Below, piece by piece: positions 1 through 33,700 of a stretch of DNA of 64,000 bases. Source of the stretch: Mytilus trossulus (taxonomy: Eukaryota). The position numbers were made by a program, and so were the translations under genes. Where the stretch lies: NCBI RefSeq assembly GCF_036588685.1, contig NC_086379.1, positions 20,708,001 to 20,772,000 on the forward strand, in the 5' to 3' direction. The number at the start of each line of letters is the position of its first letter. The first letter of the stretch is position 1. Below the pieces are notes generated by a model that saw nothing but the letters and a program-made list of their open reading frames with translations, was not told where the DNA came from and ran no database searches.

Positions 1-718
1 AACAGTAAGCTGGATCCGGAATCAGAGACCCCAATGAGAAGCAGTAGGGTTACGTTTCTTTAACAAAAAATAACGGCGCGTTTTATTCAATTTAACATGC
101 ATTTTGAAGTGACATAACTAGATATGCTTTTTATGTTGTAAAATTAATATATCAAGTTGAATTATTTTAGTCGGAAGTACAAATTCGTTTAACATTTTGT
201 TAGGGGCCTAATAAGTTTTTTCCTGACATGTATAAGTCTAGCTCTTCGCTATCTTTTCGTCTTGATGAAAATTTAATGACCCTGTATATAATGTATGAGG
301 TCACTAGCACGCTGTTCAATTAAAAATATGTTGTATTTTTTTCAAATCCTAAATATACTATAAGTTTGTTTAAGAAGGTATATGAAACATTACATTTGCT
401 GTACAGCTTACTCTTTCCCAAGAGAATCCATATACATCTTCGACGTATAATTGATGTTATAAGTGCTGGGAAGTATTATTATTTGATAAAATATGCAGTT
501 TCCTTATGGAACCTCTGCATGGACCGGAATATACATCTCACAGATTTAAACTGAACATTTTACATCCTGTATAATTGAATGTGAAACTGGAGAAAATATT
601 TTCTCTCGGTTTTAGTTTGTAACCCGGATTTGTTTTTTTCTAAATTGATTTATGACTTATGAAAAGCGGTGTGCTACTGTTGCCTTTATCCATCAGTGTA
701 TGTTGACCCAAACAATAA

Positions 719-782: not shown

Positions 783-3700
783 GTGAGTCTTTAGAAATAT
801 TTTTTTATTTATATATTTTATTAGTTGAAACACTTCTTTGTCGACCGGAATTATTATTGATATAATCATAACTGTAAATGAGATGTTAAGAGAAACTAGG
901 GTATGTATAGGGATTGATTAACTTAACTGTATAAGGCAATACATTTCTGTTTCCCACAATGCTCCTGAAAGTTGCTGTTTATTTGGCCTTTTCATCCTTT
1001 TTTTTTGTATTACTGATGAGTCGTTTGTAGATGATACGCATGGATCCAGTTATTCATCTCTCGTTTAAATATAACACTTGGTTAAACATAACCTAGAATA
1101 TTTTTTTTAAATGATGTTTCCTGAAGAAGAGTTTAAATTCTGTTGATTAACTTCTTTTGAACTCATCGTTATGTTACCCATGGACATCTGTCTGGACAAA
1201 TAATATGATCACTTATTAAAACAATATCTTTTTACGCGTCTAAATTCTTTTATGAAAAAAAGTACAAAAACAAAGAAGGGTTGGTCGTAGAATTATATTT
1301 GATGACAGATAAATACATATTTAAAGTAAAATATGTTTAATTTTGTTTATTCAATTTGTGTAAATAGTTTTTAAAGGAACCAGGAAGATGACAGTGTGAA
1401 AACAAATTTTGATTGCAAAATGTCTGTGAGAGAGACACTATAAATGTTAATCTCGATGCAAAAAGAGGGAAGGATCGTAGAACACAAAACTAGTTTTACA
1501 CTACTTTTGGTCTATGATAAAGAAAAAAAATGTATTTTATGAAACATTAATTGATTTGAAACAGGGGGTTGTACTTTTGAATTAAAATTTCCTTGAATTA
1601 CATTTAAATTGGGGTTCAAAGCATTGTTTAATAATAATCTTTGAACGAGGGTTGAACAAAGGTGAAATTAAACAAAAAAATGAACAAACGAAAATGACAT
1701 CATTTGATGAATAAACAAGATGCAGCCGTACAAAATTATAATACTATTGAGTGTATTTAAAATTGTTTCACATAAAGGTCAAATATACTCATACGGACAA
1801 TCTAAAAGTTAGACTATTGTGATAATATAATTATCGAAGCGTATATGGAGCTAGGAAGTATTATTAAACATATATAAATGGATTTTCACAAATAAATATT
1901 AATGTTCTAGAAAACTAGCTAAGAACTGAATGAAATGATTAATTTCAATATGTTTTAAAATCCGAAAGTATGTGGGCTTATCTCTTGATATAGTTTTGAA
2001 CAACATTTTTCAACACTATATCTATAAAGAAATATTTTTACGATTGTGGTTATATAGATGTAAGTTTATATTGCATTTTCGTCGAAAAATAATAACTTCT
2101 TCGTATGAGTATAAATATTCTATAAATGAAAAACGAGTCATAGGCTTCTACATTTCTAAATCTATAATTAAACCAAACTAAATTATCTAATAAAAAAAAT
2201 ATATTACGAAATGGAAACATTTTCTATATGCCTTTGTTATTGTTATGGGTTTAATTTCTGACATGGCTACATTTGTATTCATGACTTTAACGATCCAAAA
2301 CTGACCGAAATGAATATTTTTGGACCAAACATGTGACATAATGATTGTATTATGCGGTATCTGCGGGGATTCGATTTATCCCTTTTTGTAGGTTCTACAG
2401 ATGCTCGTAGTTAAATATGTATTGATTAACGCAAAAGCGGAGACATGAATTAAATCATTTCTGCAATTAAATTTACAAATAAGTTGTAGTATGTATTCCA
2501 ATAGCCACTTTGCAAAAGCAGAGTAGCTCCTTTGTGGTTATTAAAGATTTACATGTATAAATCTTCATAATACAATGAATTAATATTTGTAAAGAGAATG
2601 TCTATAAGTGTCAGAAAAGGAAATAGTCGAGTGTAGGTGTTTGTTGGTCAAGTATCAGGAAGTACTAATACTTCTGGAGTGGTGGGCATTACTGTTGACG
2701 TTTGTGGGGTTCTTGATGCGTATTTCAAGTTTGCATCATGAATACTTGGACTCGCTAATATGATATAAGCCTTAAGTTCCTCTGTCGATATTTAATGACA
2801 TAAATTATAAGCACATTAGAAAAAAAGAAATGTTTTACTTTATTTGTGTGACCATAATTAATTAAATTTTACATGAATACATTCGCTATGTATACAGATA
2901 ATGCTCTACGACACTTTACTTGTTTTTTTTTCAAACTATCTTAATCTGATCTGAGCGTCACTGAATTGTCTTATGAAGACGAAACGCGCGTCTGGTGTAT
3001 TAAAGTATAAGACTGGTACCTTTGAAATCTACTTAAATACTCTCGCTATGTTAAAAAATATAATATAACCTTTTACATTATTAAAACACGCTTCCATTCG
3101 GGATAAAGAAAACATGTCAAACTATATTATAAAAATAAGAAAGTATATAAACAGTATTCTACCGATATTCTTCTGACCCAAAATGCAATCGATTGGGAAT
3201 ATATCACCAAAAGTGAAAAGTTAAAACGTCGGGTATTGTATGACGCGTATGTTTTGTAAATAATTTCTTCAATCAACCAATTTGTTAACGTGGCCGTGAG
3301 TCGAGAATTCTGTAATTTTACTAGAAAACTTATCAATTAAATACTGGTACAAATACTTTTACTTTGATATTCACAACACACATACAAATTTAAAAGTTTT
3401 AACAACTTAAAATGGGTGAAGTAGCCTTCGAGGAATTTGAAATAGACAGCATAGTCATACATTTCCGCAAACAATATAAGGATACTAATCATACACATGT
3501 GACATAAACTAAAGACATATATATTTTGAGACTCGAATGATTCTTCTTCTCCTGATTTATTTTTTGTGTGAAATGGTGACAAATGTGTACATTCTATCAT
3601 CTAATCTCCGTACCATAACATTTACAGTTAAGGCAATCATTTTCATTGGTTCGACATCAATGAAACCGATATAAATCTTCTGTGATGTACGGAAATACAT

Positions 3701-9700: not shown

Positions 9701-12700
9701 ATGCGCATTTCGACAATACATGTCTCTTCAGTGATGCTCATGGCCAATATTTTTGAAATCCAAAGCTTATTTAAAAGATGAAGAGCTTTAATCCAAAAGG
9801 TCCAAAAAGTATAACCAAATCCGTGTAAGGAATCAGAGCTTTGCATGAGGGAGATACATTCCTTAATTTATAATAATTTTTAACATTTTGTAACAGGAAA
9901 TTTTATTAACACAAACAAGTCTGTATATTCATGCCAGTACCGAAGTACTGGCTACTTGGCTGGTGAAACCCTCGGGGACTAAAATTCTACCAGCAGAAGC
10001 ATCGACCCAGTGGTAGTAATAATATTAACGGTACCAATTTTCCTGCACCAGATGCACATTCCGACAATACATGTCTCTTCAGTGATGCTCGTGGCCATAA
10101 TATTTGAAATGCCAAGCTTTTATAAAAGATGAAGAGCGTATTGAATTAGATTTAAAGATAATTTTCAGTAAAATCTTAACATTCTTGATTTTCTTGTACT
10201 CAGCTTTGTTGGAATGTTTGCTCATAATTTCTCTTCAAATTTGTATATGATTTCGCATTCGTTCTAATCTGGTTATATACTTACTTACTATTGTATCTAT
10301 GGTGACCATAATGTCTTACAAATGGCGTCAAACAGTAGAAATTTGAAGTTTAAATTTGCTGTCTTTGCTTTTTGATTATATAACCCATAACCCAGATATT
10401 CCAAGAAAGGCATTCTGATTCTTTCACGCAGATACTGCTATTATGATATAAATACACAACTCATATGCATCAAAGCAACCAAACAAGTAAGAATATTTTG
10501 ATATTAGAGTGGAGGTATCTAAGCGTTGGGATCTACTCATTGAATATTATTTGAATTTTAAGGAAAACATTATGGATATTATATTCAAAATGAAACATTA
10601 TAGGATTAAACACATTTTTTCTACAGGTTATTGATGTGTAAACCGGGGCGATTAACTCACAAACTGAATAAAAGTCCGAAGAAAAAATGTGTTCTTTTCC
10701 ACCTTAACTTTATGATTTGATCGTCTTCGATTATTAATTTTTAGAGGAAACGCGTGTAAATGACTTTGGTTATCTTAATTTATCTTTTGTTTAATTGACT
10801 TGACTATGTTATTGCATGCACTTGTGGTCTGTCTCATATAACAGATTGGACAGCCATAGTTAACATTTGACTATCAAAACGTTTTTGAAAGACAGTTTGT
10901 GAATAATGCATTTCTGACACGAAAGAAGAAGACAATTTTACCGTTAAAATCTTTAAATGTGTTTGTTTAAAAATATTAAGCCAGAGTTTTTCTGACGATC
11001 AAAATGAAGAAAACTTTTTAACTTTTTACGATACTTTATTCCTGACATGCATAAAATAATTGTGTAGAACCACTGATACTCCATTATTTGTTAAGATAGC
11101 ATAATTGTACGAAAGGGACAACATTGTCTGATAACTCACAAATAATTTATGGATTTAAAATAAGACTATTATTTGCGATTATGTGATAGCATATTTTCAT
11201 ACTCTGACATTTATTTTTATCTAATAGGTTGACATATTCATAAAAAATACAACAATTCTTTATCATACCTTTGGTCTTTGTTTCATTTCCTTTCTATCTG
11301 CCAATATTTGTGTTATCAAAGTGAAATGACATGAAACGCTTCATTGCATTTGTTCCTGGGAAGGTCAGAGATGGACCGGAAAATACCATTTATAAATAGT
11401 GTGCATACAACTTCCTGGTTGTATGAATTTCTTATTAACCGGACGACATATTTTGATATCTGAATGAGGACTAAACACATGTTTCGATTATGTTTGATGT
11501 TTTCTATTGTGTTATTCTTAACACTATTGTACATAGATTTGTAAATGGGGGTAAGTTGACAGAATTTCAATATTTACATATACTATACATGTAGGTTAAA
11601 GCACCATATATATTTTTACTGAGATAGTTCATGTGATAGGTAAATATAAATATGATATCAAATAGGTTTTATATCATTTATCTATGTCTTCATACGGACA
11701 ATCAAATGTGAAGCTTCAATTATTATCTTGAAAATATTAAATTTAGAAAGGAGATATAATAAGAAAATAGATATGTTTATATAAATAGAATGTCATATCA
11801 TGTACTTGGTGCTTGTATACAACATGGATTTTATTTAAATCCGTAATTTTTGGTTTGTTTTTAAAGTATTACGATCATACTTATACGATAGCAAAAAAGA
11901 TATATGAAGAAAAAAGTCTAAATATCAAAGCCATTGCAATATAAGTTTAAAATTTCACAGACGAAGACTAGGAGGTTTTAAATACACGCCCTCGACATTT
12001 TCCTGATAAACTTTATATTATCATCATTATATTGTTTTTAATGGACAAAACCCAAAGATGTGTCTACTGTATCAATTCAAAACACAACATTTTTTTGGTA
12101 CATTCGAAATATACTTTTGTGCAATACATATATATTGAACAAAAATATTTATATATAGTATTAATGTATATTTCGAAAGAGTATCGATTTAATGATTTGT
12201 TTTGAATTGAAATAGTAGACAAATCAAACTACCATACATACGTTCATTTGATTTCTAATAAAAATATTATTTAGAAAGTGCGTTATTTTAACATCTTACA
12301 TTTAATTAGTTTTAGAACCAAAATATTTACAATGAAATATGCAAGTTTTGGTTTTTTTAAACCAACCTCCTTATATATTAATAGTGATCATATTAAAGTA
12401 AAATGACACAATAAACACTTAACTGTCTTTGTTCGTGAGAAAAAAAAATCTTGCTACTACACTTCTATATTCAACTTCCCGTATACTGTATGAAAACATG
12501 GGAAACCGGAAGAAATAATTTGATCATTAAATGTGGATGACACACATTTCCAAAAATGATTGATGTTTTCTTTATCTTGATCCTAAATATTATTGTATAC
12601 AGATATTCAAATGGGGGTAGGTATGCACTTGACATATTCTACATTAATCTTTTTTGGGGGATTATTTTATAATGTGATAATACATGTGATAGATAAACAA

Positions 12701-15700
12701 TAATTTGATATCAGGTGGTTTTTAATGTTATTTTAAGGCTGATTTATATTATGAGTTTATCTATCTATAAATAACCCGATGAGCAATCAAATGGTAAGCG
12801 TCAGTTTTTGTCCGAAAATGGTTATATTAAAGTAGTAGATGGAATCATAAAACAGACAATGGTATATTAATCAAATGCATAGGCAGATCTAAATGTCCTA
12901 GTGCAGAAGCCTTTCAAAATTAAACTCGACACCTGTTAAACAAGTTCTATTTTGTTTACATTTATAATTCTTTTTTGTTGAACGTATTTTCGATTCAACC
13001 CATAAAATAGAGAGAGAACAAAATATATTAACTGCATAAACGGGTCGTGGCGAGTATGAATGTTTACAATGTGAAACATTTATTGTACATATGAATTATC
13101 CAGATTTAGGTAGGGTCCTTGTTACTTAGTCTTTGGCTGTTTTTTCGTGTCTTGTGTACTATATTATGTGTAAAAAGTAAAATCACAAAAATACTGAACT
13201 CAGAGGAAAATCAATTTGGAAAGTCCATAATCACATGGCAAAATCAAAAAACAAAACGCATCAAAAACGAATGGACAAGAACTGTCATATTCCTGACTTG
13301 GTACAGGCATTTTCAAATGTAGAAAATGGTGGATTAAACCTGGTTCTATAGCGCTAACCCTCTCACTTTAATAACAGTCTCATCAAATTCCGTTACATTT
13401 ACATGATGCGTTAAATAAACAGTCACAATCAATAAAATAGTCAAAATATGGGAACATCAGTCATCATCGTATAACAATTTAACAGGACACAACAACATCT
13501 ACTATCTACGAACACATGGATTGATTTGAGTGTCTGACGTCAGAAAAATTATATACGTCACATAAATTTGTCGTTCAATGTGCATACAATAGTTATCAAA
13601 AGTACCTGGATTATAAACAATTTAAAATTTTACATAGGCAATGAGCGCAGACAGGGTTAAAAAATCAAAAGTATGTAAGAATAAATTACAGAAATCGAAC
13701 TAGTCCAAAAGTTATACATAGAATTTATGAGAATCCAAAACTTTTAAAAGGAACAATTTAAACTATATTATGTGTCCGTTTGTCTTTTAATTTTTAGCCA
13801 TGGCGTTGTCAGTTTATTTTCGACCAATGACATTGAATGTACCTCTGGTATCTTTTGTCCCTCTTTTGTGAAATATTGGTGGTTTGTGGAGAAATACTTT
13901 GATATGATAATTAATAACGAGATAAGCATGCAATACCAAATAAACTAGATCCATAACCGTTATGGAATTATTAAAACTTTTATAATGACGTCATTGAACA
14001 ATTATTGAAGTTGGTCGTATATGTACTACTATAGGTACATGTTCAGTTTCATCAGCTTCATTATCTTGCCTAACTTTCTGCCATTGACAGTGTACCTTGG
14101 ATGTGAACAAACCTTTTCCACAAAAGTGCTGCCTACAATCAGTTTTCCTATTGTCATTTTTCAATTTCAGTGCATTTATATTCAAAGCAAGGGTAAATGA
14201 AGTATAACGTTAACTTCATACATATTCTTGAATATCTATTAAGAATATTGTTCACAATCAAACTTTTTAACGAAGAGTAGTCATGACAAAGTTTCTTTAG
14301 CAAATTTTACGGACTCGATTTTGTTTTTTGGCTGTTGTTGCATATCATATGAATTATACATATATTCTTTTTTGTGTTGTCGTTTATTATAGTTACAAAG
14401 GAGGTCGTTTGCTAGTTATTGATTTACTGATACAACGCACATAGGCACATAATGTTTTTTTTTAGATATTATTGCCTTTCAACTAGTTCAGTGTTTGCCG
14501 TTAGTTCATGACTATCGTATTTACTTTTCGTAAATAGTTCGTTATACATTTTGCCCTTTGTTTTCACAATGTCGGGCCATGTGAGAGCCCATTCTACGGA
14601 ACTGGTGATTTTTGTAATTGCCTATAATTGCTTAAAACCTACTACGTTTGACCTTGGTATTCTTACCACATCTCCATATTTTTATGAAGGATGATTTATA
14701 TGTAAACAGTTATGGTGATAAAATTGAGAATGGAAATGGGGAATGTGTCAAAGAGACAATAACCCGACCAAATAAAAAAACAACAGCAGAAGGTCAACAA
14801 CAGGTCTTCAATGTAGCGAGAAATTCCCGCACCCGGAGGCGTCCTTCAGCTGGCTCCTAAACAAATATATACTAGTTCAGTGATAATGAATGCCATACTA
14901 ATTTCCAAATTGTACACAAGAAACTAAAATTAGAATAATACAAGACTAAAAAAGGCTAGAGGCTCCTGACTTGGGACAGGCGCAAAAATGCGGCGGGGTT
15001 AAACATGTTTGTGAGATCTCAACCCTCCCCTATACCTCTAACCAATGTAGAAAAATAAACGCATAACAATACGCACATTAAAATTCAGTTCAAGAGAAGT
15101 CCGAGTCTGATGTCAGAAGATGTAACCAAAGAAAATAAACAAAATGACAATAATACATAAATAACAACAGACTACTAGCAGTTAACTGACATGCCAGCTC
15201 CAGACTTCAATTAAACTGACTGAAAGGTTATGATTTCATCATATGAACATCAGGCACAATCCTTCCCGTTAGGGGTTTAGTATCATACCATCATAACATA
15301 TATGAGAAGAACATAACCCGTGTCATGCCAACAACTGTTTTTAAAATAAATGTGTTTAGTTCCGACGCAAAGACCTTATCAGTGACTCAATATTAACACC
15401 AAAATATGCAATCTTTAATGACTTGACAACAGTATCGTAATTATATCCCTTCTTAATAAGTCACAATTTATGATTATTATCAAAGCTGTTGTACGTAGAA
15501 AGTTAAATCACAAAAAAACTGAACGTAGTAGAAAATCTAATCGGAAAGTCTACAATCACATGGCAACATCAAATAAAAAAACACATCAAAAACAAACGGA
15601 CAAGAACTGTCATATTCCTGACCTGGAACAGGCATTTTCTAACCCTCTCACTTTGATGACAGTCTCATCAAATTCCGTTATATTAACAATGATGCGTGAA

Positions 15701-18700: not shown

Positions 18701-21700
18701 CCGCTTTTATGCCAATGTTAAATAAAAGATTAAAATGACAACATTACATGACAGGACTACAATAGAAATAAATGGGTGAACCTATAGGACAGAGAAACAC
18801 ACGAATAATAACTAAAAAAAGGTGCCAGGTTTAAATTCTAATAATGCCAGACGAACGTTTCATCCACACAAGACTAACCAGTGACGTTCTGATGAAAAAT
18901 GTTCGAACGCACAAAACAAGCAAAAGGGTACAAAGTTAAAGAGCATTGAGGACAAAAAGTTCTAAAAGGTTAGCCAAATACGGCTTGGGTTTCTGCCTGG
19001 GATGAGAACATCCTTATCATTTAGAATAATTCATACATTTGCAAACAGTATTTTGTTTATAAACTGACCAAATAATAGATAAAAATGATAAAACCGGTGA
19101 ATAACTATAAAATAAAATCTAATAAATAAATAACCTTAACCAGCATATAAAAATTCACAGCCGCGTTAGCCAAATCGATAAACGCACACATTTAAGTGAA
19201 GTCACCTTTGAATTTCTAAAAATTTCCCCAAAATATAGAATAGAATTAGGAAAGAAATCAAGATTAGGTTTGTAATGTAGATATAACATTTATTAATAAC
19301 AATGAAAATTACAATACTAAATAATATCAAATTGTGGTAGTAATAAGTTAATTAATTTATTATTTAGCTATGTCGGAATTTTTTTAAATCAAACTGTTAA
19401 CCAAATAGATCGTATATAAACTATTCAAATACAACTTAAAATTACCTGCAAATATGTAAAAGAGACAGAAATTGAAAAAATAAATTCCCACTTCCGGTTA
19501 CGGTGGTACAGAATCATGCAATCGAGTAATAGAATGGAGGTGAAGATGTGTGATGAAAAAGTCTTTTGAAAGATAGATTATTTTTTAAGATATACAGAGA
19601 GCTCGAATGATGTATTCCTTTTCAATATTGTAATTCGTTCTTACAACTACAGGAACACAATGTTGTACAGTTCAGACCAGCCCTATAACACGTGCATCTT
19701 CAAGAAAAAGTTTTCTAACATCAAAATTGTATACCTCCTGTTGCAGCAATGTCTACTAATTGTTTAAATTGGGTATCCAAAACCCATCTGTTGTCTCCTT
19801 AACAAATCCCACATCCACCCGCTTAGATATTGTTTATGTATGAATACCTGTCCACAAACATGACCAACTTGATGTGCAGCTCGTTAAATGTGCTCAAGCA
19901 GTGACGCTCTGTTAGTTGGAATAGTGCCATACTGTTTAATTCGCGTGCAAGATTTATTGATGTCAAATGTTGTTATAATATCGTACAAAATCACAACAGA
20001 AACCCTATATAAGCTTTACTGACCAAATGCAAATTTCTTTTGCAATCGTCCATACCCCTCGGTTACTTCATCAATTATTTACCATTTCTACTATGCCATG
20101 TATGCTGACTGCTTTCCTTTTTCTTTATCAAGTAATAACAGTGTCACATTCAATCAACATATTGAAAAGGCTAAAATTACTGAGTTAAGACCAGGAGATT
20201 GATCAATTTTGCGAATCAGAAGCCATCGCCATTTTTTTTCAAATGCAACCCAATGTGTTTTTACTTGTAGTGTCTTAAATAGAGATATCACCAAAACCAC
20301 AACATCAGATCTGAGCTGATTTTCAGTTTCGACTCACATCCCCGTCTAGCTGCACTTCTATATGAGAAACATAATTGTGATCGCTTCCTTGTGATTACTC
20401 GGACTACGATTAGCATGGTAGTAATAAGTTAATTAATAGAATTTGTCACAACAATGTGTTCTTGGATTCAGCACCCCTAGCTCTACGGGTTTATGCTTTT
20501 AGGCTAAAGACCATTTAATATTTAATCATGTAATATCTTCACCCGTCAACCGAACCGTATTTAACTTATACTTATTCTGTCAATTCATGATTAAATAGTC
20601 ATTGTTTTGAATGCAAGTTGTTTTAGAAAGATATCCAGGTTTTATGTTCATGAAAACATTAGGAAGTTTAGATTACGTTTTAGATTTTTGTAAACTTGAA
20701 GAGTATATTATTTTACCCTTTTTTACGCCAACATGATTCTTTCATTTGATACTGAGAAATAGAGATTATGGTAAATGAAAGGTGATTTTAGAGATATATT
20801 TAGCTTAGGTTGTGGTCTATGATGTCGACCGCAGCTGTGGTAGGTAAACACTTTGTCTTAAAATAGAAAAAGGCAAACGACATCATTCATTTAACGTTCA
20901 ATTACAGCTTCTTCCAGTTGAGTAACCACAAATATTTCAAGTATCTGATTTTAAGAGATGCACAACACCCATGTTGAATAATGTATCATTAAACTTTCTC
21001 AAAACGTTCTTATGTTGTACTGTTATACCACTGTCCCGGGTTAGGGGGAGTGTTGGGATCCCGCTGACATGTTTAACCCCGCCACATTATGTGCCAAGTC
21101 AGTACCCTGTAATTCAGTTGTTGTCGTTTGTTTACGTGTTATATATTTGTTTTTCATCCATTTTTTTTATATAAATAAGGCCATTAGTTTTCTCGTTTCA
21201 ATTGTTTTACATTGTCATATCGGGTCCTTCTATAGCTGACTATACGGTTTGGGCTTTGATCATTGTTGATGGCCGTACGGTGACCTATAGTTGTTAATGT
21301 TTGTGTCATTTTGGTCTCTTGTGGAAAGTTTTCTCATTGGCAATCATACCACATCTTCTTTTTTTATATTCATGACTTACTACGTTTATAAAATAAAGTG
21401 ATCAACAATATAACCATAGAATGATAACTCAAATATTGTGTGAGTTAAATATCCGAACACTTCTGATAATCAGGCCGAGTGATTATCCTTTTACCAGCTG
21501 TATAACAATTTTTTGTATGTGATACAACTTAATTAAAAGTTTGCTCTCATTTACCAAGATTGTTTATTCAGTATCATTTTATTTCCATGCGATATGTACA
21601 CCATGCAGGTGATCATGCACCTTCTCCTAGGTTCTGTTCACTTGCATTAACACATTCTGTCGACGATTAAAGTACGACTCCATGACTTAAATTAATTACT

Positions 21701-24700
21701 ATCATAGCACTATGATTTCAACAAATGTTAATTATTTATAAAACCGGAAGTAAGTCATCGATCTTAATTTGAACGGAAATGATGTTCTACTACAACAGCC
21801 AGACAAATAAATCTTCATTCACTTCACCTAGTACCTTTCTTATAAATTACAAGCATTATGTATGCAAAATAGACCAAACATTCGATTGTTTTAACTAAAC
21901 AACGGCATTTTGAAAATGATCGAATAGATTTTTTACTTGACTATCCCCTTACTATGATAAAATACACCTAAAGGCATGTTCTTAAAAAGTTTCATGCTTA
22001 TATCACAATTTGCATGATTTGTGTAGTAAGCATCTTAACTAGTCGTATTACATGTTTCACATATTCTATTGAAAATCTGCAATCAAAGTGAATGTAAAAA
22101 TTATGTTAAATTTCATCTAAATTTAACATTGATTGTGCACATTCTTGAGTTAAACATTGTAACATGAGATACAAATTCACTTGAATTTCACACATACCAA
22201 TATTTATTCCATTTTTTCTAATGGCAAAATTGAATAATTTCAAAGATGTCAAGCTTTGTGTCGATATTTAATTTTGAGGTAACTTCTTTTTTTTACAATA
22301 TTTAGGATTTAAAAGAGGATAGAAAAAAAACAGAGGACATTTCAACTCATACGTCGAAAACAAACAGACAACGCCATGGCTAAAACGAAAGAGACCACTA
22401 TACAAACAATGGTAAATAAAACACAACATGGAAAACTAAACACTCAGCAACACGAACCCCATCAAGACTTGGAATGTTTTCATGTGCTCCAGAATGGTAA
22501 GCAGATTCTGCTTCACATATGACATCCGACGTGTTACTCGTGTTATTACAAAAGTTTTATTAGGGAGGTCGCATTCGGGATGATGGCTTCCGTAAAACTA
22601 ACAAAGGAATGACTTCAACTTCACCACTTTGAACTCTTGGTTAAATAGCTAAAAGAGGGACGAAAGATACCAAAGGGACAGTCAAACTCATAAATCTAAA
22701 ACAAACTGACAACGCCATGGCTAAAAATGAAAAGACAAACAGAAAAACAACAGTACACATGACACGACATAGAAAACTAAAGAATAAACAACACGAACCC
22801 CACCAACAACTAGTAGTGATCTCAGGTGCTCCGGAAGGGTAAGCAGATCCTGCTCCATATGCGGCATCCGTCGTGTTGCTTAGCTAACTTGTGACCAGCA
22901 ACCCTCTCTCAAGAAAACCATAATAGGAAAAACAAGGTCTTGAATATCGTGTCAACTGGAAAATATATACTCCGTATACAGGTGCCAATTGGTTGTTGCT
23001 ACATAGAAATGGAAAGTTCACAATTGGGATGTCAAAATCTCTATTGCCATAAAGTTGTCTCTTTTCAAAAAAGTAAAATAACAAACATATTGAGCTCCGC
23101 GCAAAAAAAGTCCCTAATTAAATTGCAAAATCAAAAGCTTAAACAAACGAATAGATAACAACTGTCAAATTCCTGACTTGGGACAGGCATTTGTTTGGTA
23201 AAAAAAGTGGATTGAACCTTGTTTTATATTTAGCTAAACCTCCCAACAACAAATCATTGTAAATTTTTGAATGTGAGTCAAGATATGACTCTTAACTGTA
23301 TTTGTTGTATCTTTGATCTAAATTTCGGTGGATGTACTAGGCCTCGGTGGCCGAGTGGTCTAAGTAATTACTACTGTAATCACTTAGGCTTCCTTCACAA
23401 TACAAAATCGGCCGCCACGATAAAGCCCAAAGGCGGTGCTTACAAATTGCATTAAAACACCAAAAATAAAAATAAATCGAAGGAGGTAGATGCTTTTAAG
23501 TATTGAGCATTTCGAACAAAAGATAGAAACAAATATTTTGGTTATGGAAAGAGTAAACCTTTCTTTTTACAATTTTTTTTCCCTTGCTTTACATTGCTAA
23601 GTGAAAGCTGGCTTATAAAGTATTTAGGACTGGCTATATTTCACCTTTAATTAATACATATAGAAAGAACCTACATCTAAAGGTAATGTTTGACATACAC
23701 ATTTGATAATACGTTAGAAAACTTTTTTTTCAAAATGTCTTCTGTCATCAATAAAATATCGAATCCCATTACTCGAGTAGATACTGCAGGCATTCTAGAG
23801 AAACTTAAAATTGATAATGGAAATGGGAAATGTGACAAAAAGACAACAACCCGACCATAGAGCAGACAACAACAGAAGGTTACCAACATTATTCTATTTT
23901 TCGGTCATTTTGTTCGGTTTGTGTTGCTCAATTACCAATTTGCTGTAACATGGTATCACAAGGTGCTACATTTGTATAATGAAAAAAATCACGATATATA
24001 GAGTTTGAAAATAAGATATATGAACTACTTCCTTTATATAGAATGTTGAAATTAGAATGCAAATACTATTATTAAATTATATTATTGTAGCATGTAACAT
24101 GGAACAGTAAATAGTTATCAAAGGTACCAGGATTATAATTTAGTACGCCAGACGCGCGTTTCGTCTACATAAGACTCATCAGTGACGTTCATATCAAAAT
24201 ATTTATAAAGCCAAACAAGTAAAAAGTTGAAGAGCAAAAATGTATATACTAATCGCGCCTCGCTGATTTGTTTTCATTGACAAAAAATGGCGGATCCGGT
24301 CCACTTTGATTGTTTTCTTTGATCAATCGAGGGAATAGAAAGGCAGACAACGATGGTGATAAGGTTAAATTCTAGGCCAAAACAAGTAGGGCTTTTTATA
24401 GCTGACTATGCGGTATGGCCTTTGTTCATTGGTGATTTGTTTTCATTGACAAAAATGGCGGACCCGGTCAACTTTCGATGTTTTCTTTTATCAATCGGGG
24501 GAATAGAAAGGCAGACAACGATAGTGATAAAGGTAAATTCTAGGCCACACAAGTTGGGCCTTTTATAGCTGACTATGCGGTATGGCCTTTGTTCATTGGT
24601 GACCTATAGTTGTTTATTTCTGTGTTCTTTTGGTCTCTTGTGGAGAGTTGTCCCATTGGCAATATTAACACATCTTCTTTTTTATATATAAAACGAATAG

Positions 24701-27700
24701 TTGTGGTGAAATTGAAAAAAAATCCAAGTGAGGTATATCTCATAAATGAGGGACTCACCATCAGGCAAGGGGTAGCTTTACTGTTGAAGAAAAGATAAAA
24801 AGGGGGGAATCGTTTCAATTGGTACAATTTTTCTAAAAGAGGGTCCCATTATATTTAATGATAAAGCAGATATATACAGGAATAATATATGCTCGATATC
24901 CATATGATGAGGACATACTCTTTTGCCAAATTAAGCTTACATGTCAGTAACTGCTAGCCATCCATTGTTAATTTATGTTTATGATTGGCGTTTTCCTTAG
25001 TTTTTTCTTCATCTATTCTTACATCGGCCTCGGATATCTTTTAAACTTAGTATTAGTCTGCGTATTAATGTGTGCATGTTTATTTCACATTAATAGAGGT
25101 ATACGGTGAGGTTACAAACTCAAAAAACACGTTTAACCCCTTCATTTCCTCCATCCCCCTCCCCATCCCACCCCACCCCCGCATGTTTGCGCCGGTCCCA
25201 AACTCAGGAACCTCTAGCCTTTGTGCTGGTTTATTTTATATGTTATATAAATAAAGTGTGGAATCAATTCCGGTGAACCAGTATACATTATTGTTTAAGA
25301 CCCAGCTGAAGCCCACTATGGTTGCGGCATTATCTGTGTTGAAGACTAATTGATGGCTTTGTGCTGTCTTATATTCTTTGGTCGAGTTGTTGTCTTTTTA
25401 GGTGTCATACCACCAATTACTCCCTCAAATTTAGAACGTATGTGAAAATAGGCCTACTCGGACAAAAAATAGTGCATTTGATGTCATTGTTTTCTTAAAC
25501 TAACCAAAAAATTGGCAGAAATGAAACTTTTGTTGAAAGAACCATTTTGAGCTAAAATTTACTTGTTTATCAGTTTGCATTCAAAATTTAGGATTAATGC
25601 ACTCCATAGTATACTAATTTAAGATTTCCAGAAAACCAGGGGTTATTTTTAGTGGTACCTCTATTCGGAAGACCTTTTCTTTTTTATATGATTTTAAACA
25701 TCTGAAAATTGGCATGTAGAAAGCTGATACATGTACGATTCAGGATATACCTGGATATCTATGAAGTTAAACTTAAGGTAAAATATTTATAAATTTTGAA
25801 AATTGTAAAATTTGATTGAACAGATCGGGACTTTTTAATTGGTGGTATGACACCTTTAGCACATTGGCCGTTTCCTTTACCAATTTTATAGAAATGTTTT
25901 GAATTTGAATTCAACGATATATTTTTTTCTTCTTGTAGGATGCTTCAGTTTGAATACTAGTCTAAAGAGTGGATTTCATCGTGGAAACTTTTCGTTTGGA
26001 GACAATTCCGCCACCAAATGCTCAAGGGCCTGTCCGAATAAAACAGAATATATCTTTATGAGGGTAAGCTACCCAAATTTCAATTGAATCTCAAAATAAT
26101 ATGTTTGTGTTTATTTTTCTGTAGCGTTATGGAATTTTCCATTCGGTCCTACATGATATTTAAGTGCGTAATGCTGCAAGTCATGAATATAATCAATATA
26201 TGTGCTGGTATAGCGTATCTTATAGCGCGTCGGACGCACGACATTTGTACGTTATGTTTTCATTTTTTTCTAACTGTTTACAAAATCGATCTATTATTTG
26301 ATATAATCTTACTTTTCTTTTACATTTTCATATCTATGAATTACAAACCAACGTTTGATTTTTGTTGAGAGAATGAACTTTATCTGAACTGTTATTAGTA
26401 TGTTAATAACTTTAGATTTGGATCCTCAATGCTCTTCAATTTTGTACTTGTTTGGCTTTATAAATATTTTGATATGAGCGTCACTGATGAGTCTTCTGTA
26501 GACGAAACGCGCGTCTGGCGTACTAAATTATAATCCTGGTACCTTTGTTAACTATTTACACCACTGGGTCGATGCCACAGCTGGTGGACGTTTCGTCCCC
26601 GAGGGTAACACCAGCCAAGTAGTTAACATTTCGGTGTTGACATGAATATCAATAATGTGGTCATTTTTAAAAATTTCCTGTTTACCAAACAATGAATTTT
26701 TACGAAAAACTAAGGATTTTCTTATCCCAGGCATAGATTACCTTAGCCATATTTGGCACAACTTTTTGTAGCTTTGGATCCTCAATGCTCTTCAACTTTG
26801 TACTTGTTTGGCTTTATTAATATCTAGATATGAGCGTCACTGATGAGTCTTATGTAGACGAAACGCGCGTCTGGCGTACTAAATTGTAATCCTGGTACCT
26901 TTGATAACTATTAATTATGTGTATACGATTCATTTTAGGATAGAGAATGTCTTTGTATTCCTTTGGTCAATTTTCACCAGCATAACACATATAGTGAAGA
27001 AAATACTGGTGCTTGCAAGAATACTTGCGATGGAAATAGTAGAGACTTGTGTGGCAATGCTACGTCTACTGAAGGAAAGGAGATGTACAGTGTCTATAAA
27101 ATAGTTAGCAGTATGTAATGCATTTAAAATACTCGCAGTTACTGACAGCTAATGTAAAGCCAAAACAATTCATAAAATAATCATGCAACTTACTCTTCCG
27201 GAGCACCTGAGATCACCCCGGTTTTTAGTGGGGTTCGTGTTGCTTAGTCTTTAGTTTTCTATGGTGTGTCTTGTGTACTATTATTTGTCTGGCTGTCTTT
27301 TTATTTTTTACCCATGGTATTTTCAGTTTATTTTCAATCTATGAGTTTGACTGTCCCTTTGGTATATTTCGCCCTTTTTAAGACTAACATATCAATCAGG
27401 ACACACCCAACATCCAAACGATTTCGTTTTAAGACGTATTAAATAGTCAAAGAAAAACATGACCTTGTGTAATGTCAAGATACATGTATCGACAGATTGT
27501 AGAGCCGTGAATGTGCAACAATACTTAGTGTGATTTTAATATGCTGATAACAAAAATTAATACCTATACTTAAAAAAACTAGAGGTTCTAAAGATCCTGT
27601 GTTGCTCGCCTGTATTTACTGATGCTTTGGACATCATGTAAAATGCGATTAAAATCATAATTTATAGTATACGATATCATTAGATACTATAATAATATCT

Positions 27701-30700
27701 AAGATAATAGCAAAAACTCCAAAATTTCCATAAAATTACTAACTCAGGGGCAGCAAAAACAACTGGTTGTCGGATATGTCTGTAAATTTCATTTTCATAC
27801 AAATATGAACGTATGGGAAATGGCAAATTTTCATACTTCAACGAAAACAAAACAATTATGAAACTTTTTGCAAACTAATATTTGCATGTACTATCTTGCA
27901 CAAATGTTAAGTTTTAAAAAATTATGTCAAACTTACAAATTAAACAAACAAAAGACAATAAAGGAAATATGTACATTTTTTTTAACAATTACTGCGATAA
28001 TGATGACGTCAGTATGTACATTAAAGATTTATCCTACCGATTGGACTTAAATAAAGTTAACACTCACACTGCTATCTTTAACAGGAAGCATAATACCAAA
28101 ATGTATGATAAAAGAGATTATTTTTCGTGTCTTATAGTTAATTATATGTTATCAGATGATTACGTTATCTTGTCAACATCTTAAGGGCATACAATACAGT
28201 TTCAGGGGAGGTAATGACGTTGCTAACGTAACTTGTTATTTTCGCGACGTCAAACTGTGACTTATAAGGAAAAGATACAGTTTTCGACTGATTTTAGGTA
28301 TTTCACATCCAATCTTTTATTGTTATATTTGTTTAATTTGTAAGTTTGACATAATTTTTTAAAACTTCGGTTTTCACATGAAAATCTGACCAAACCTTTT
28401 AACAAGGGATATAGTTACGATACTGGTATTAGGTCCATAAAGAAGACATATGTTGGCTTTAATATTGATTCACTTATAGGGTTTTATGATGGTTTAATAC
28501 TAAACCCTTAAGGGGAGGGATTGTGCTTGATTTTCATATGATAAAGACATACTATTTCAATCAGTTTAGTTGAAGTCTGGAGCTGGCATGTCAGTAACTG
28601 CTAGTAGTCCTTTGTTTATTTATGTATCATTGTTATTTTCCTAAATTTATTGTGTTACCTAACATGACATCGGACTCTGTCATCATTTAAACTGAGTTTT
28701 ACTGTGCATATAACAGTGTGTTTCTTTACTCTACATTGGCTAGATGTATAATGTTTCATTTACTGTTATCAGTTTTTTGTCCCTTTTCCATTCCTTGTTA
28801 TCTGTTATAATCCAAATTAATTTGCTGTTTTGCTGCTATTGGAACCCTCATTGCCCCCTTTTTCATCTAAAGTCGCGCTCATGTTGTTTATCATTTAAGT
28901 AATGATTTCCTAACCATCAGTGTTCAATGTCACATTTTATATTATGTTAAGTTATTATTTTTTAGGACGCATTTCAAAAGTGGGGTTTGGAGACACTTGT
29001 ACAAAGACGATTTTGGACGAGAAGAGAATTTACAAATTTATTTACACAACTTGTACTGCCGAACAGAATTATATCTGCGAAAGATTTGATAAATCTAGTA
29101 CGTTAAATTTTATTATGTATTATAAAAAGCCTATGGTGTATTCTGTCTATTTCAGTAGTATTCATAATTATTTTTGTGTCCATAAGAGACAATCTTACAT
29201 TCCATAAATATGCATAGGTACATATGTGCATCAACTAATAAGAAATAAATATCATTGAACTTTTAAAAAAGAATGCAAAATTTTTCGGAGCTTTGAAAAA
29301 TGATACAATATGCAATGCTTTGGTGTGTAATTCTTTAATCAAAGACCGCATTCCAGAACCATACAACACTTTATAAAAGAGTCACGTTTTATGGAAAAAA
29401 AGATAGTGGTTATTAGAAGTTCAAAAATATCTGGTTATTAAACGGAATATATATATTTTCATAAAAGAGAAGACTTATTTTGCCATAACGACATATATCA
29501 TTTATATTGTGTCGTCCCAAAAATACGTTCTTGTCTCATTTTTGTCATTTATAAATATTGCGAGCTAATTTCATTGATAGTGTGTAACAAAAGGCATGTT
29601 TTCATTATACATTTTTTTTTTTTTTTAGCTCAAACTTATCCTGAAACCTGTCATTATGAAACTGTATCATGGAACACTGCTCAAGAAAGTTGCCAGGAAC
29701 AGGGTTTGCATCTTCGGTTACACACTAGCACTACGCCTACATGTTTACAAGGACATAATTTCTGGAGTGGGGATCATATCGTAGATCAAATTGTGTGGGC
29801 AAATGGTATTAACATTTTTGGCCTTTGTTACTATAGCAACATATGCATATGGGAATAAGGTCAAAATTTACAATGTCCTATTCACACTGAATTATAAGAT
29901 ACATTTTACCCATGTTTGCATCAGAGTTAGACACAATACTGAATAGTTTCGTTCGTACTTAGTCTTGCTTTAATGAACGTGACCTGTTGAATTTGATTTT
30001 AAGTTTCATAATATGTTTTACGCTTATAACATACATTAAGGTTTTCACTGGGAGTATATCTGTTTTTGATCAATATTCCTTATATTCCCTTATTTCTTTG
30101 TATATTTTATTATATAGTGTTATAAGTGAGATGTTACTTCTTATAAACTATTTTTTCTTGTTAAATATCCATGTAGATTTTGTTTCCTCAGGAATAGATT
30201 ACCTTTAAGTTAGCTGTATTTGTCAACACTTAAAGGAATTTTTATCTTATATGCTCTTCAACTTCGTACTTTATTTGGCCTTTTTCTTTTTTGGAAACGA
30301 GCGTCACTGATGAGTCTTTTTTAGACGAAATGCACGTCTGGCATTAATACAAAATGTAATTCTGGTATTTGAATTTATTTACAACATCTGGGTTGATGCC
30401 ACTGCTGGTGGAGTTTTAATTCCCGACGATATCACCAGCCCATGCCAGTAGTCAGCACTTTTGTGCTGACATGAATTATCATTGATATGGTCATATTTAT
30501 ATATTAATTGTTTACAAAACTTTGAATTAATGAAATACTAAGGGTTTTCTACCTCAGGAATAGATTACATAAGCTGTATTTGATAAAACTTTTAGCAATT
30601 TCGGTCTGCAGTGCTCTTCAACATCGTACTTTTTTTACCTGTTTTCCTTTTTTTGATTCGAGGGTCACTGATGAGTCTGTGTATCTATGATGAGTTGATT

Positions 30701-33700
30701 TCCTACTTTAGGCTGCAATTAGGAAAGACACAATATCATATATTTAACCTTATTTTGTTATTAATGTCATTTGCTAGAAAGAGGAATACATATAATGCAA
30801 GTTATCGATGGTTTCATATTTATTCAATCATCTTTTTTCACGAATTTGTTCTTATAGTTATCAAAAGTACCAGGATTATAATTTTATACGCCAGACGCGC
30901 GTTTCGTCTACATAAGACTCATCAGTGACGCTCAGATCAAAATAGTTAAAAAGCCAAATAAATACAAAGTTGAAGAGCATTGAGGACCCAAATTTCCGAA
31001 ACGTTGTGCCAAATACGGCTAAGCTAATCTACTCCTGGGGTAAGAAAATCCTTAGTTTTTCGAAAAATTCAAAGTTTTGTAAACAGAAAATTTATAAAAA
31101 TGACCATATAATTGATATTCATGTCAACACCGAAGTGCTGACTACTGGGCTGGTGATACCCTCGGGGACGAAACGGTCTGCTCAATAATATAACTTATCT
31201 TATTTCTATGCCCTCGCTGCTAGGCGTCGGGGCATAAAGTGCTATCCTTGTTCGTCCATCCGTAAGTCCTTTCCGCAATTGGTTTCCGTTCTCTAACTTT
31301 AGTTTGCTCAATCAAATTTTATAAAACCTATCCACAATGCTTATTTCTACAATACACAGATCAAGTTTGAAATTGAGTGGCATTACTTTATCTCTTATTG
31401 AGTAATTTCCTTTTATAAATGAAAAGTTGTAACGTTCATCTAAATAGAATGAAATTATTTTATTAAAAACAACAATATAAAATAGCAAAGAAAATGTATT
31501 TCAGAATATTTATTCCAGTAAAATCTTATATTAAATAAAGATTCACCTATTAAAATCGATGGAAATCCTAGCATATTTGTAAATATACATATTATGCTGG
31601 ATTTGGAAAATATTTGATAACCTCACATATTTGCATGGAATGTGCATGAATGTTACATATATTCCAATGAAAGATATATTATTTTGGGCAAACGAATGAA
31701 GTTGGCCTCAACCGAAAGCGATAAGATTAATACATAATGCCAATTACAATAAAACCAAGATCAAGTTTGAAATCCAGAAACATCACATTATACCGTTTAT
31801 GAGTTATGATTCTATGAATATAAAAAATGCAGTTTTTTTCGTTTCTGTTCTCCTTCTTCAGCTTGTCTCAACTAAATGTTATAAAACTTATACACAAAAC
31901 ACCAAGTTTGGAATTAAGTTGTGTTATTATCCTAGAGTTATGTCCCTCGGTAAACATAAATATTCTTAATCTGTGATGTTCCTTCTCTTGTTGTAGTTTG
32001 CCTCGGCCGAATGTATTTAATCTTTAACACCATGTTTATAGTCACAAGAAAACTGTCAAAATAACGTGAATCTTGCATCTAAATGTGGACGTTGACTCAT
32101 GCATATTTACGAGCTGGGGCATCTGTGACCCATAGACACATTCTGCATTTTTATAACATTCCTTTTGACAATTTTTTAATTGAAGTTTTGAATAGTTTGA
32201 TTTCTCTTTACTCTTGGTAAATTATCTGACATAAATAAATATCTTTCGACTTCGTACGTATATTTTATAGATGAAGAATTACGTTTTTACTTCATTTGCC
32301 CAAGGTATATGAGAAAATCATCGACTTAATATCTTGAACAAAATATCTTAATGAGTTTGATATAACATTATAATAGTAGTACATTTTTCAATATTTCAAA
32401 ATTCGTGAATTATTGAAATCACCTAAAGCCAGCCTTTGCTTGACAGATGCATATCAATTTACTGTGTTTTAGTATTGTTTATGATAACTGCCAAGTATAC
32501 TTATTAAAAGAGTATGATACGTTTCAGTAATTCAAGTAAATCCGACATTTACCTTTGTATCTATCAATTGATTCATACAACTTAGTTATAAAATAATGGT
32601 ATCATTGAAGGACCACAAACATTCTAATTTTTAACAAATTGTAATGGATAATTCTATAAATAATCTTTTTGATACAAAATTTTAGATACCTTACCGACAG
32701 ATGCTTTGTGTCTGAAGTTAGTAATAACTGAATCCGGTTCCAGTTTTGAGACTGAAAATTGCAGCACTTCATTGTATTCATTATGTTGTAAGTACTTTTT
32801 TAACTTTTGTGTATGTTAGTTACAACAGAAAAGTTGCAACATGTAGGCCTCTATTTGTAAATCTTTTATATCAAGTTGTGAAATAAAAGTAAAATAACAA
32901 ATTTAGAGAACTCAAAGGAAAATTCAAAAACAAAAAGCCCATTATCCAAAGGAAAAATTGAAAGGTCAAACGATTGAGTTTATCCGTTCGGTCTTAAAAT
33001 TTAGATATGAAATGATCTATATTTTAATTATAAATATATTGGAATTTATTCAATTCAAAAGCTATATCATGACGTCGGGGGATTTGTATTTGATGTATGC
33101 AGAATTGCCATTCGTTTAATCTATTATCAAATAGATAAACCTCCGACACAAAGCACTTGTAATCTGTATCTGAATAGAATTAAATTGTGAAAAAACACAT
33201 GTATAATCTATACCATTAAACGAGAAGATCTCATTTTATGTGACGCTTCTCTTTGTTCCACAATGAATAAATCATCATGCCTTTGTTTCCTTTAGGTACC
33301 ATGCATAGTCAGATTTGTCATCCTTGCTTATGATTATTCCGTTTGTGTTTTGGGAGAAAACCATAGCAAAGGCGTCCGGATATCGTTTCCGTCATCGGCT
33401 AGACTTTTAAGTAATAGACTAGAATTCGTTTAGAAATTACACATAGTTTTCATTAAGGTCGAAATGGGGGTAACTTCATGACGTAACGGTTAAATTTCTT
33501 GACAATGACGTTGACGGTAATATTTGGTCAGAAAAAAACTTCATTATTAAAATAAATATATTTTTAAAATTTTAATCGGTCAAAATTGCATGATATTCTA
33601 CATTTATATTTATTCAGGTTTGTACGATTAAACAAAAAAAACTTGTTATATCATTAGTACTTACCAAACGAATATAATAATTTACTCAAAAAAGGAATAT

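What the first reader, a model, noticed from the sequence alone, without database searches (positions are those of the whole stretch)
26417..26938. Intact tandem hammerhead (retrozyme) pair in sense orientation inside the intron splitting the WSC domain
Seen: two perfect type I hammerheads lie 356 nt apart in the 875-nt intron 3, on the transcribed strand. The second cleavage site (26871) is 67 nt from the 3' splice site, and the element ends about 28 nt before it. Established: minimal hammerheads with a 2-bp stem III and palindromic loop self-cleave as dimers, and metazoan non-LTR retrozymes, including mussel ones, yield circRNAs of about 350-400 nt. Inference: the host pre-mRNA supplies both partners in cis, so it could be cut co-transcriptionally. 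That would release a 356-nt circle and compete with or retime splicing of a putative immune receptor.
Basis: partly seen in the sequence, partly recalled or inferred. Interest (0 to 1): 0.85.

Follow-up and report, generated by a model that had tools for sequence, protein, structure and literature searches.

The report
Ordinary mussel retrozyme copy in an intron
The two self-cleaving hammerhead RNA motifs are real, but they belong to one rather old copy of a published mussel mobile element present in thousands of copies, sitting in an intron that is still spliced normally, so the finding is ordinary.

Summary
Observation confirmed. Two type I hammerheads lie on the + strand at 26478-26521 and 26834-26877. 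The predicted cuts fall after C26515 and C26871, 356 nt apart.

They sit in a 500-bp element (26413-26912) bounded by 144-bp direct repeats that are 94% identical. This is a 1.4-unit copy of the non-LTR retrozyme family published for Mytilus galloprovincialis (PMC7229834). The assembly holds 18,401 exact copies of this hammerhead core.

The host gene is on the + strand. A 970-nt contig of run X1 joins exons 25939-26063, 26939-27110 and 28966-29097. Intron 26064-26938 (875 nt, GT..AG) is therefore real, and it is removed correctly with the element inside it.

A paralogue 67 kb upstream has an intron at the same codon position and no retrozyme, so the element is a secondary insertion. It has 15 private differences in 356 nt, so it is not young. 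I found no sign that selection keeps its hammerheads intact.

The transcript probably yields a few 356-nt circles. The claim that cleavage competes with splicing has no support here. The tested mussel hammerhead is slow, and slow intronic hammerheads did not block splicing in earlier experiments.

This scan's unchecked notes list other intronic retrozymes in this genome. Verdict: already known, low interest.

The parts
26413..26912 (+). Retrozyme insertion of 500 bp. It covers monomer positions 254-356, one full 356-nt monomer, then positions 1-41 (a 1.4-mer). The 5' edge is uncertain by about 10 nt (26403-26417).
   Evidence: blastn of the monomer against the window; 144-nt direct repeats; GC 38%, longest stop-free stretch 61 aa
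26413..26556 (+). Upstream 144-nt direct repeat carrying hammerhead 1
   Evidence: family D1; 8 differences from the downstream repeat
26769..26912 (+). Downstream 144-nt direct repeat carrying hammerhead 2
   Evidence: 94% identical to the upstream repeat
26478..26521 (+). Hammerhead 1 (type I), loop 2 UUCUGUA, predicted cut after C26515
   Evidence: Rfam RF00163, 32.5 bits, E 3.3e-4; exact core
26834..26877 (+). Hammerhead 2 (type I), loop 2 UUAUGUA, predicted cut after C26871. It is identical to the commonest hammerhead of the family sample (24 of 52 monomers).
   Evidence: Rfam 33.0 bits, E 2.4e-4
26516..26871 (+). The 356-nt unit that double cleavage would release, the predicted precursor of the circle. 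It has 15 private differences from the family majority.
   Evidence: circular fold -77.2 kcal/mol, 60% paired, z -1.06
26589..26597 (+). Anti-hammerhead segment (within GGACGUUUCGUCC). It pairs with the helix II / GAAA part of the hammerhead in the MFE folds.
   Evidence: MFE pairing 26589-26597 with 26857-26865; the matching helix appears in the circular monomer fold
26064..26938 (+). Host intron, 875 nt, GT..AG, phase 0, holding the element
   Evidence: a spliced contig of run X1 joins 26062/26063 to 26938/26939 (table 8, record 1); ends read
25939..26063 (+). Upstream exon, putative first half of a WSC-like domain
   Evidence: record 1; open frame; no Pfam hit alone
26939..27110 (+). Downstream exon, putative second half of a WSC-like domain
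   Evidence: record 1; Pfam WSC PF01822, E 0.02, profile 49-81
28966..29097 (+). Next exon of the same transcript. The reading frame continues across the junction.
   Evidence: record 1

Best explanation
This is one dispersed, fairly old copy of the known Mytilus non-LTR retrozyme family. It inserted as a 5'-truncated 1.4-mer into an intron that already existed, in a + strand gene for a putative WSC-like membrane protein.

Shown:
- The two hammerheads are intact and tandem, and they lie on the transcribed strand.
- The element has the family's standard insertion shape.
- The gene is expressed, and the intron is removed precisely.

Inferred:
- The family has no known promoter of its own, so the element is transcribed passively as part of the host pre-mRNA.
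- A fraction of pre-mRNA or excised intron is cut after C26515 and C26871, either by two single hammerheads or by a double hammerhead.
- That adds a tiny share to the cell's retrozyme circRNA pool.
- The cut is slow relative to spliceosome assembly, so host mRNA output is little or not at all affected.
- The copy is decaying neutrally.
For: Identity of the element:
- Hammerheads.
- Family size: the 356-nt monomer finds 170 scored matches out of 3914 first-look candidates in the same genome, the best at 95%. There are 18,401 exact hammerhead cores in the assembly and 0 for the reversed control.
- The published M. galloprovincialis genomic clone has the same hammerhead apart from loop 2, and alignable flanks (one search compared by eye).
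- The paper reports about 5000 hammerheads, repeats of 350-390 bp, kobs about 0.1 per min, abundant circRNAs and ligation by RtcB.

Insertion shape:
- In the sampled insertions the 3' end is nearly always fixed at monomer position 39-46 and the 5' end varies. This copy runs 254..41.

Host gene:
- Intron and strand: a spliced 970-nt contig covers three exons in one open frame, with GT..AG ends.
- Secondary insertion: the paralogue in L032 has its intron at the same codon position and gives no retrozyme match.

Age and lack of selection:
- 15 private differences in 356 nt, and mean identity of 93.7% to the other copies, against 96.0% between those copies.
- The two repeats differ at 8 of 144 positions, one of them inside a hammerhead. 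P = 0.24 for one or fewer by chance.
- 40 of 52 sampled family monomers have intact hammerheads.
- An older sense copy at 30176-30678 in a downstream intron has decayed.

Literature:
- Retrozymes seem to lack promoters and are thought to be read through (PMC7761336).
- Hammerhead-cut introns still splice (PMC2995048).
Against: - No locus-specific RNA evidence. The runs were available only as contigs, and the retrozyme bins are swamped by other family members. Cleavage or a circle from this copy is therefore neither shown nor excluded.
- In the full-length fold neither hammerhead form is the MFE. The MFE is -118.7 kcal/mol, the double hammerhead -111.1 and two single hammerheads -103.4. Activity would depend on folding during transcription.
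- An intronic ribozyme can lower host expression: the CPEB3 ribozyme does (PMC10919898). An effect cannot be ruled out.
- In Xenopus, retrozymes are somewhat depleted from introns (preprint 10.64898/2026.07.22.740005). That hints that genic copies are not always harmless.
Confidence: 0.82

Rival explanations
1. Co-transcriptional cleavage at the two hammerheads breaks the pre-mRNA 67 nt before the 3' splice site. It competes measurably with splicing, so the element throttles or retimes expression of the host receptor.
For: - Sense orientation, intact tandem hammerheads, and nearness to the 3' splice site.
- The double-hammerhead fold is favoured over two single ones.
- Precedent: inhibiting the intronic CPEB3 ribozyme raises CPEB3 mRNA and protein (PMC10919898).
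- Retrozymes are modestly depleted from Xenopus introns.
Against: - The correctly spliced product is seen.
- The tested mussel hammerhead is slow and lacks most of the loop-loop contacts.
- Hammerhead-cut introns were spliced as well as intact ones, and only a fast ribozyme aborted splicing.
- No sign of selection on this copy.
- The paralogue lacks the element.
- This genome holds thousands of such copies.
Confidence: 0.1
2. Inert relic. The motifs are intact on paper but do not cleave at this locus in vivo. They are trapped in alternative pairings, such as the anti-hammerhead segment and flanking intron sequence, or the intron is removed and degraded first. No circle ever comes from this copy.
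For: - The MFE of the 546-nt context holds neither hammerhead fold. Hammerhead 2 pairs with 26589-26597, and hammerhead 1 pairs with 26919-26934.
- An isolated single hammerhead fold scores -3.4 kcal/mol, against -10.8 (hammerhead 1) and -9.2 (hammerhead 2) for their alternative folds.
- Host transcript depth is low: contig depth 13 in X1.
Against: - A near-identical hammerhead in its natural monomer context cleaved during transcription in vitro. The same alternative pairings exist in all active family members.
- Hammerhead 2 is identical to the commonest family variant.
Confidence: 0.07
3. Chance motifs or an assembly artefact, not a real element.
For: Both Rfam scores are just under the gathering score.
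Against: - No match to the core pattern in 100 shuffles.
- The whole 356-nt unit is 92-95% identical to the great majority of the full-length copies listed from the same genome.
- The spacing and direct repeats match the family architecture exactly.
Confidence: 0.01

Closest known systems
Metazoan non-LTR retrozymes of Mytilus galloprovincialis (Cervera and de la Pena 2020, PMC7229834)
   Same: - The same type I hammerhead. It is identical to the cloned genomic retrozyme outside loop 2.
- The same monomer size class: 356 nt here against 350-390 bp published.
- Low GC, no coding capacity, and tandem hammerheads.
- Thousands of copies.
- Predicted circRNA of about 350 nt.
   Different: Nothing essential. 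This copy belongs to the loop-2 UUAUGUA / UUCUGUA variants, not the UUUUGUA of the published clone. It is a single 1.4-mer, not a long array, and it lies in an intron.
Double hammerheads of newt satellite 2 and axolotl retrozymes
   Same: A weak helix III with a palindromic loop. The two motifs co-fold into an 8-bp intermolecular helix III with swapped helices I.
   Different: Helix III here has 2 bp. The literature reports that invertebrate hammerheads of this type cleave as single motifs, so a dimer is possible but not required.
Domesticated intronic ribozymes: the CPEB3 HDV-like ribozyme and the amniote intronic hammerheads (de la Pena and Garcia-Robles 2010; Chen et al. 2024, PMC10919898)
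   Same: A self-cleaving RNA on the sense strand of an intron, upstream of the next exon. In principle it can compete with splicing.
   Different: Those are single-copy, conserved across species and, for CPEB3, shown to affect host expression. This one is a decaying copy of a mobile family with over 18,000 hammerhead cores. It is absent from the paralogue, and conservation and effect were not tested.
Penelope-like elements and their terminal repeats (PMC8557442; preprint 10.64898/2026.07.22.740005)
   Same: - Type I hammerheads.
- Tandem arrangement.
- 5'-truncated insertions.
- They are the proposed autonomous partner and origin of animal retrozymes.
   Different: No reverse transcriptase or GIY-YIG endonuclease ORF lies in or next to this element, so it is non-autonomous.

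Membership tests
Metazoan non-LTR retrozyme | Type I hammerhead with the complete catalytic core | tested here: met
   Rfam RF00163 at 32.5 and 33.0 bits. Exact core with no match in 100 shuffles. All core positions read.
Metazoan non-LTR retrozyme | Two or more hammerheads in direct orientation, one repeat unit apart (about 170-400 nt; mussel 350-390) | tested here: met
   356 nt between cleavage sites, both on the + strand.
Metazoan non-LTR retrozyme | No LTR/PBS/PPT, no protein-coding capacity, low GC | tested here: met
   GC 38%, and the longest stop-free stretch is 61 aa across six frames. The repeats are simply the overlap of a 1.4-mer. PBS and PPT motifs were not searched for specifically.
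Metazoan non-LTR retrozyme | Multi-copy family, dispersed and in tandem arrays in the same genome | tested here: met
   3914 first-look candidates, 170 scored matches on many chromosomes, arrays of up to 8 or more units. 18,401 exact hammerhead cores.
Metazoan non-LTR retrozyme | Sequence homology to a published member | tested here: met
   The published M. galloprovincialis clone in the supplement shares the hammerhead, apart from loop 2, and flanking blocks with 26440-26620.
Metazoan non-LTR retrozyme | Self-cleavage of the RNA | not testable with these tools
   Only by homology: the near-identical hammerhead cleaves at about 0.1 per min in vitro.
Metazoan non-LTR retrozyme | Expression as circular RNA | tested here: inconclusive
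   Family k-mers are very deep in run X1, which also holds the spliced mRNA contig. Contigs cannot show circles or assign them to this copy. Circles are shown for the family in the literature.
Domesticated intronic regulatory ribozyme (CPEB3 / amniote intronic hammerhead type) | Conserved at the same intronic site in related genes or species | tested here: not met
   The only comparator available, the paralogue 67 kb upstream, has the intron but no retrozyme. Orthologues in other species could not be examined.
Domesticated intronic regulatory ribozyme (CPEB3 / amniote intronic hammerhead type) | Ribozyme preserved by selection relative to flanking sequence | tested here: not met
   1 of the 8 differences between the repeats falls in the hammerhead, P = 0.24. 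In the family sample the hammerhead columns are no more conserved than the rest.
Domesticated intronic regulatory ribozyme (CPEB3 / amniote intronic hammerhead type) | Measurable effect on host mRNA | not testable with these tools
   Only the presence of the correctly spliced form is seen.
Double (dimeric) hammerhead | Palindromic helix III region that lets two motifs form a joint extended helix III | tested here: met
   The co-fold MFE of the two motifs is the double hammerhead, -29.5 kcal/mol. In context it scores -111.1, against -103.4 for two single hammerheads.
Double (dimeric) hammerhead | Cleavage depends on the dimer | not testable with these tools
   The literature says invertebrate motifs of this kind cleave as monomers.

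The most novel reading that the evidence does not exclude
Sense-oriented retrozyme copies in the introns of expressed genes, such as this one, may be a main source of the cell's retrozyme circRNAs, because the family has no known promoter. They may also impose a small, selectable cost on their host genes through pre-mRNA cleavage. This copy carries 15 private bases and sits 26 nt from a 3' splice site, so it would be a SNP-tagged test case for both ideas.
Probability: 0.1. Interest if true: 0.5.

Novelty: already known. Interest (0 to 1): 0.15.

Why it matters
Little for this locus on its own: it is one of many thousands of copies of a published element.

The broader question is still open. 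Where does transcription of promoter-less retrozymes come from, and do genic sense copies harm their hosts? Loci like this one make it testable, because the private bases allow locus-specific assays and a correctly spliced mRNA is available as a read-out.

A small by-product is the family's insertion shape, with a 3' end fixed about 41 nt past the cleavage site and variable 5' truncation. This points to reverse transcription of a multimeric template from a defined start, which fits mobilisation of the non-LTR, Penelope-like kind.

Tried and rejected
- Locus-specific circle. I laid four public runs on 25300-29200. All were contigs only. The retrozyme bins hold thousands of short contigs from other copies, so the many back-joints and skips listed there cannot be assigned to this locus. 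No conclusion. The run search listed no holder on record as RNA. X1 is taken as RNA only because it holds a spliced contig.
- Empty-site allele or haplotig. Searches of the same genome with the unique flanks 25860-26412 and 26913-27160 found only the locus itself, one old paralogue and two short, probably unrelated matches. No allele without the insertion was seen.
- Target-site duplication. There is none convincing for this copy. A shared TATGT in both flanks does not abut the element. No long duplications stood out in the other insertions either.
- Unusual stability of the circle. The circular fold of the monomer is not more stable than shuffles, z = -1.06. I therefore make no claim that it is highly self-paired.
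- Pfam on single exons for the C-type-lectin parts of the host gene gave nothing.
- Selection on the hammerheads: not significant.
- Orientation bias of retrozymes within genes across the genome could not be tested, because no gene annotation is available here.

Full report
**What is there**

Rfam's type I hammerhead model matches 26478-26521 (32.5 bits, E 3.3e-4) and 26834-26877 (33.0 bits, E 2.4e-4). Both are on the + strand and just under the gathering score of 34. The core pattern CTGATGAGTC-N7-GACGAAAC matches both sites exactly, and 100 shuffles of the window gave no match.

All conserved positions are present. Helix I has 6 bp and helix II has 3 bp with a 7-nt loop. Helix III is 2 bp with a GCGC loop inside the 8-nt palindrome ACGCGCGU. 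The predicted cuts fall after C26515 and C26871, 356 nt apart. The two motifs differ only in loop 2, at 26496 (C in one, A in the other).

**The element**

The hammerheads lie in 144-nt direct repeats, 26413-26556 and 26769-26912, which are 94% identical (8 differences). Measured against the 356-nt unit between the cleavage sites, the element covers positions 254-356, then 1-356, then 1-41. It is therefore a 500-bp 1.4-mer. Its GC content is 38% and it has no meaningful ORF.

**The family**

The 356-nt unit has 3914 first-look candidates in the window's own 1.3-Gb assembly. All but two of the listed full-length matches are 92-95% identical, and they lie on many chromosomes, as single units and as arrays. 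The exact hammerhead core occurs 18,401 times, and its reversed control occurs 0 times.

The supplement of Cervera and de la Pena 2020 prints a cloned M. galloprovincialis genomic retrozyme. Compared by eye, its hammerhead equals these two outside loop 2, and its flanks are visibly homologous. That paper reports the following:
- about 5000 hammerheads in repeats of 350-390 bp;
- co-transcriptional self-cleavage at about 0.1 per min;
- abundant circRNAs in mussel tissues;
- circularisation by RtcB, not by the ribozyme.

So this is a copy of a published family.

**Insertion shape (a by-product)**

I sampled 22 non-overlapping insertions from other loci, plus the window's copies. The 3' end nearly always falls at monomer position 39-46 (...TTGATAACTAT). 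The 5' end falls anywhere from position 1 to 325, with 0 to 8 full units in between. This looks like 5'-truncated reverse transcripts of a multimeric template started at a defined site, which is non-LTR behaviour. The 2020 paper does not mention truncation. I found no convincing target-site duplication for this copy.

**The host gene and the intron**

A 970-nt contig of run X1 lies on the window as three abutting pieces: 25938-26062, 26938-27110 and 28966-29097, with 1 to 2 mismatches each (table 8, record 1). The true exon edges are 25939-26063, 26939-27110 and 28966-29097, because one G at the junction is ambiguous.

Both introns have GT..AG ends on the + strand, and the reading frame runs through all three exons. 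The gene is therefore on the + strand, and the 875-nt intron 26064-26938 is real. It is removed correctly even though the element ends only 26 nt before the acceptor.

The WSC assignment is only weakly supported. Exon 26939-27110 hits Pfam WSC at E 0.02. The paralogue's equivalent exon hits at E 0.008. Both match the second half of the profile and both are under the cut-off. The upstream exon gives no hit alone. The number 'intron 3' was not checked.

**Secondary insertion and age**

A paralogue 67 kb upstream (L032) has exons that are 57% and 47% identical in protein. An intron of about 1 kb separates them at the same codon position, and it gives no retrozyme match. So the intron came first and the element arrived later.

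The copy has 15 private differences in 356 nt. Its mean identity to the other sampled copies is 93.7%, while those copies share 96.0% between loci and 98.2% within arrays. It is therefore older than the sampled bulk of the family.

Nothing indicates selection on its hammerheads:
- One of the 8 differences between the repeats lies in a hammerhead (P = 0.24).
- Hammerhead columns are no better conserved than the rest of the unit.
- 40 of 52 sampled units have intact hammerheads anyway.
- An older sense copy in a downstream intron, 30176-30678 at 73% identity, has decayed.

**How it most likely works**

Reviews state that retrozymes seem to lack promoters and are probably transcribed by read-through (PMC7761336). 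Here the host pre-mRNA supplies that transcription.

Folding gives these results:
- Each isolated hammerhead fold is weak, -3.4 kcal/mol, against -10.8 and -9.2 for the two motifs' alternative folds.
- The two motifs together have the double hammerhead as their MFE, -29.5 kcal/mol.
- In the 546-nt context the MFE is -118.7, the double hammerhead -111.1 and two single hammerheads -103.4.

The active forms must therefore be caught during transcription, and the double form is the cheaper one. The segment 26589-26597 pairs with the hammerhead core in the MFE folds. This is the usual anti-hammerhead strand of a viroid-like circle, and it explains the scan's separate note on 26561-26622.

My inference is that some pre-mRNA or excised intron is cut at both sites. 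The 356-nt product is then ligated into a circle and adds a minute share to the retrozyme pool.

**Does it affect the host?**

- The correctly spliced form exists.
- The tested mussel ribozyme is slow and lacks most loop-loop contacts.
- As summarised in PMC2995048, Dye et al. 2006 found hammerhead-cut introns spliced as efficiently as intact ones. Fong et al. 2009 found that only a fast ribozyme aborts splicing.

Two points argue the other way. Inhibiting the intronic CPEB3 ribozyme raises host expression (PMC10919898). A 2026 preprint finds 42-44% of Xenopus retrozymes in introns, with a modest depletion relative to intergenic DNA. A small cost is therefore possible, and I give it about 0.1.

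**What could not be done**

All four runs were available only as contigs, and the retrozyme bins are flooded by other family members. No locus-specific circle, RNA end or expression level can be read from them. No allele without the insertion was found in the assembly. Orientation bias across the genome needs a gene annotation.

**Comparison and verdict**

The element meets every defining feature of the metazoan non-LTR retrozyme that could be tested, and it matches the published mussel family. It fails the two testable features of a domesticated intronic ribozyme, namely positional conservation and selective preservation.

The scan's own unchecked notes list 29 entries on hammerhead retrozymes and introns in this genome, and several of the eight shown call the copy sense-oriented. 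That fits the copy number, but I did not test those notes.

The element is already known, and interest is low.

Noticed in passing
window 24107-24236 (-): A solo retrozyme fragment (monomer positions 271-356 plus 1-44) antisense to the host gene. It carries the best-scoring hammerhead of the window, at 24145-24188 (36.1 bits, above Rfam's gathering score).
   Followed up: partly
window 30854-31175 (-) and 30176-30678 (+): Two more retrozyme insertions in a downstream intron of the same gene. One is an antisense 0.9-mer with an intact hammerhead at 30888-30931. The other is an older sense 1.4-mer, 73% identical, with one weakened hammerhead (30301-30344, 27.9 bits) and one truncated hammerhead.
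   Followed up: partly
window 2900-2992, 4217-4287, 9700-10036, 18850-19081, 52555-52749, 55221-55308: Six further diverged fragments of the same or related retrozyme families, 70-91% identical. That makes about ten retrozyme-derived pieces in 64 kb.
   Followed up: no
loci L002-L030 and the window copies: Family-wide insertion shape. The 3' end is fixed at monomer position 39-46 after the cleavage site, the 5' truncation point varies, and 0 to 8 full units lie between. Units within an array are 98.2% identical and units at different loci are 96.0% identical.
   Followed up: partly
window 26589-26597 (within 26561-26622): This segment is complementary to the hammerhead core and pairs with it in the MFE folds of the circle and of the intron context. 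It is probably the anti-hammerhead strand of the rod, not a relic ribozyme on the other strand.
   Followed up: partly
L032 (G000:C7:20665250-20668403), 67 kb upstream of the locus: A paralogue of the host gene with the same intron position between the two WSC-like exons (L032 1515-1640 and 2657-2827) and no retrozyme in the intron.
   Followed up: partly
window 26875-26914: The retrozyme's 3' end carries branch-point-like motifs: UACUAAA at about 26877-26883, UUGAU at about 26901-26905, and UUAAU at the element's edge. The 26 nt left before the acceptor hold no well-placed consensus branch point. The element may now supply the branch site of this intron.
   Followed up: no
window 7010-7100: A near-perfect 91-nt palindromic hairpin. 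It hits plant miRNA models on both strands far below their gathering scores. It is probably an inverted-repeat (MITE-like) element.
   Followed up: no
window 24283-24602: Tandem repeat with a period of about 168 bp, two to three units, 85-96% identical.
   Followed up: no
window 25300-25823, 27134-27395, 28182-28312, 28444-28705: These intronic stretches have very high summed k-mer depth in all four public runs. They are other high-copy repeats of this genome.
   Followed up: no
window 15240-15304 (-): SECIS_1 match at 32.3 bits, under the gathering score of 35, E 0.017. Probably chance.
   Followed up: no
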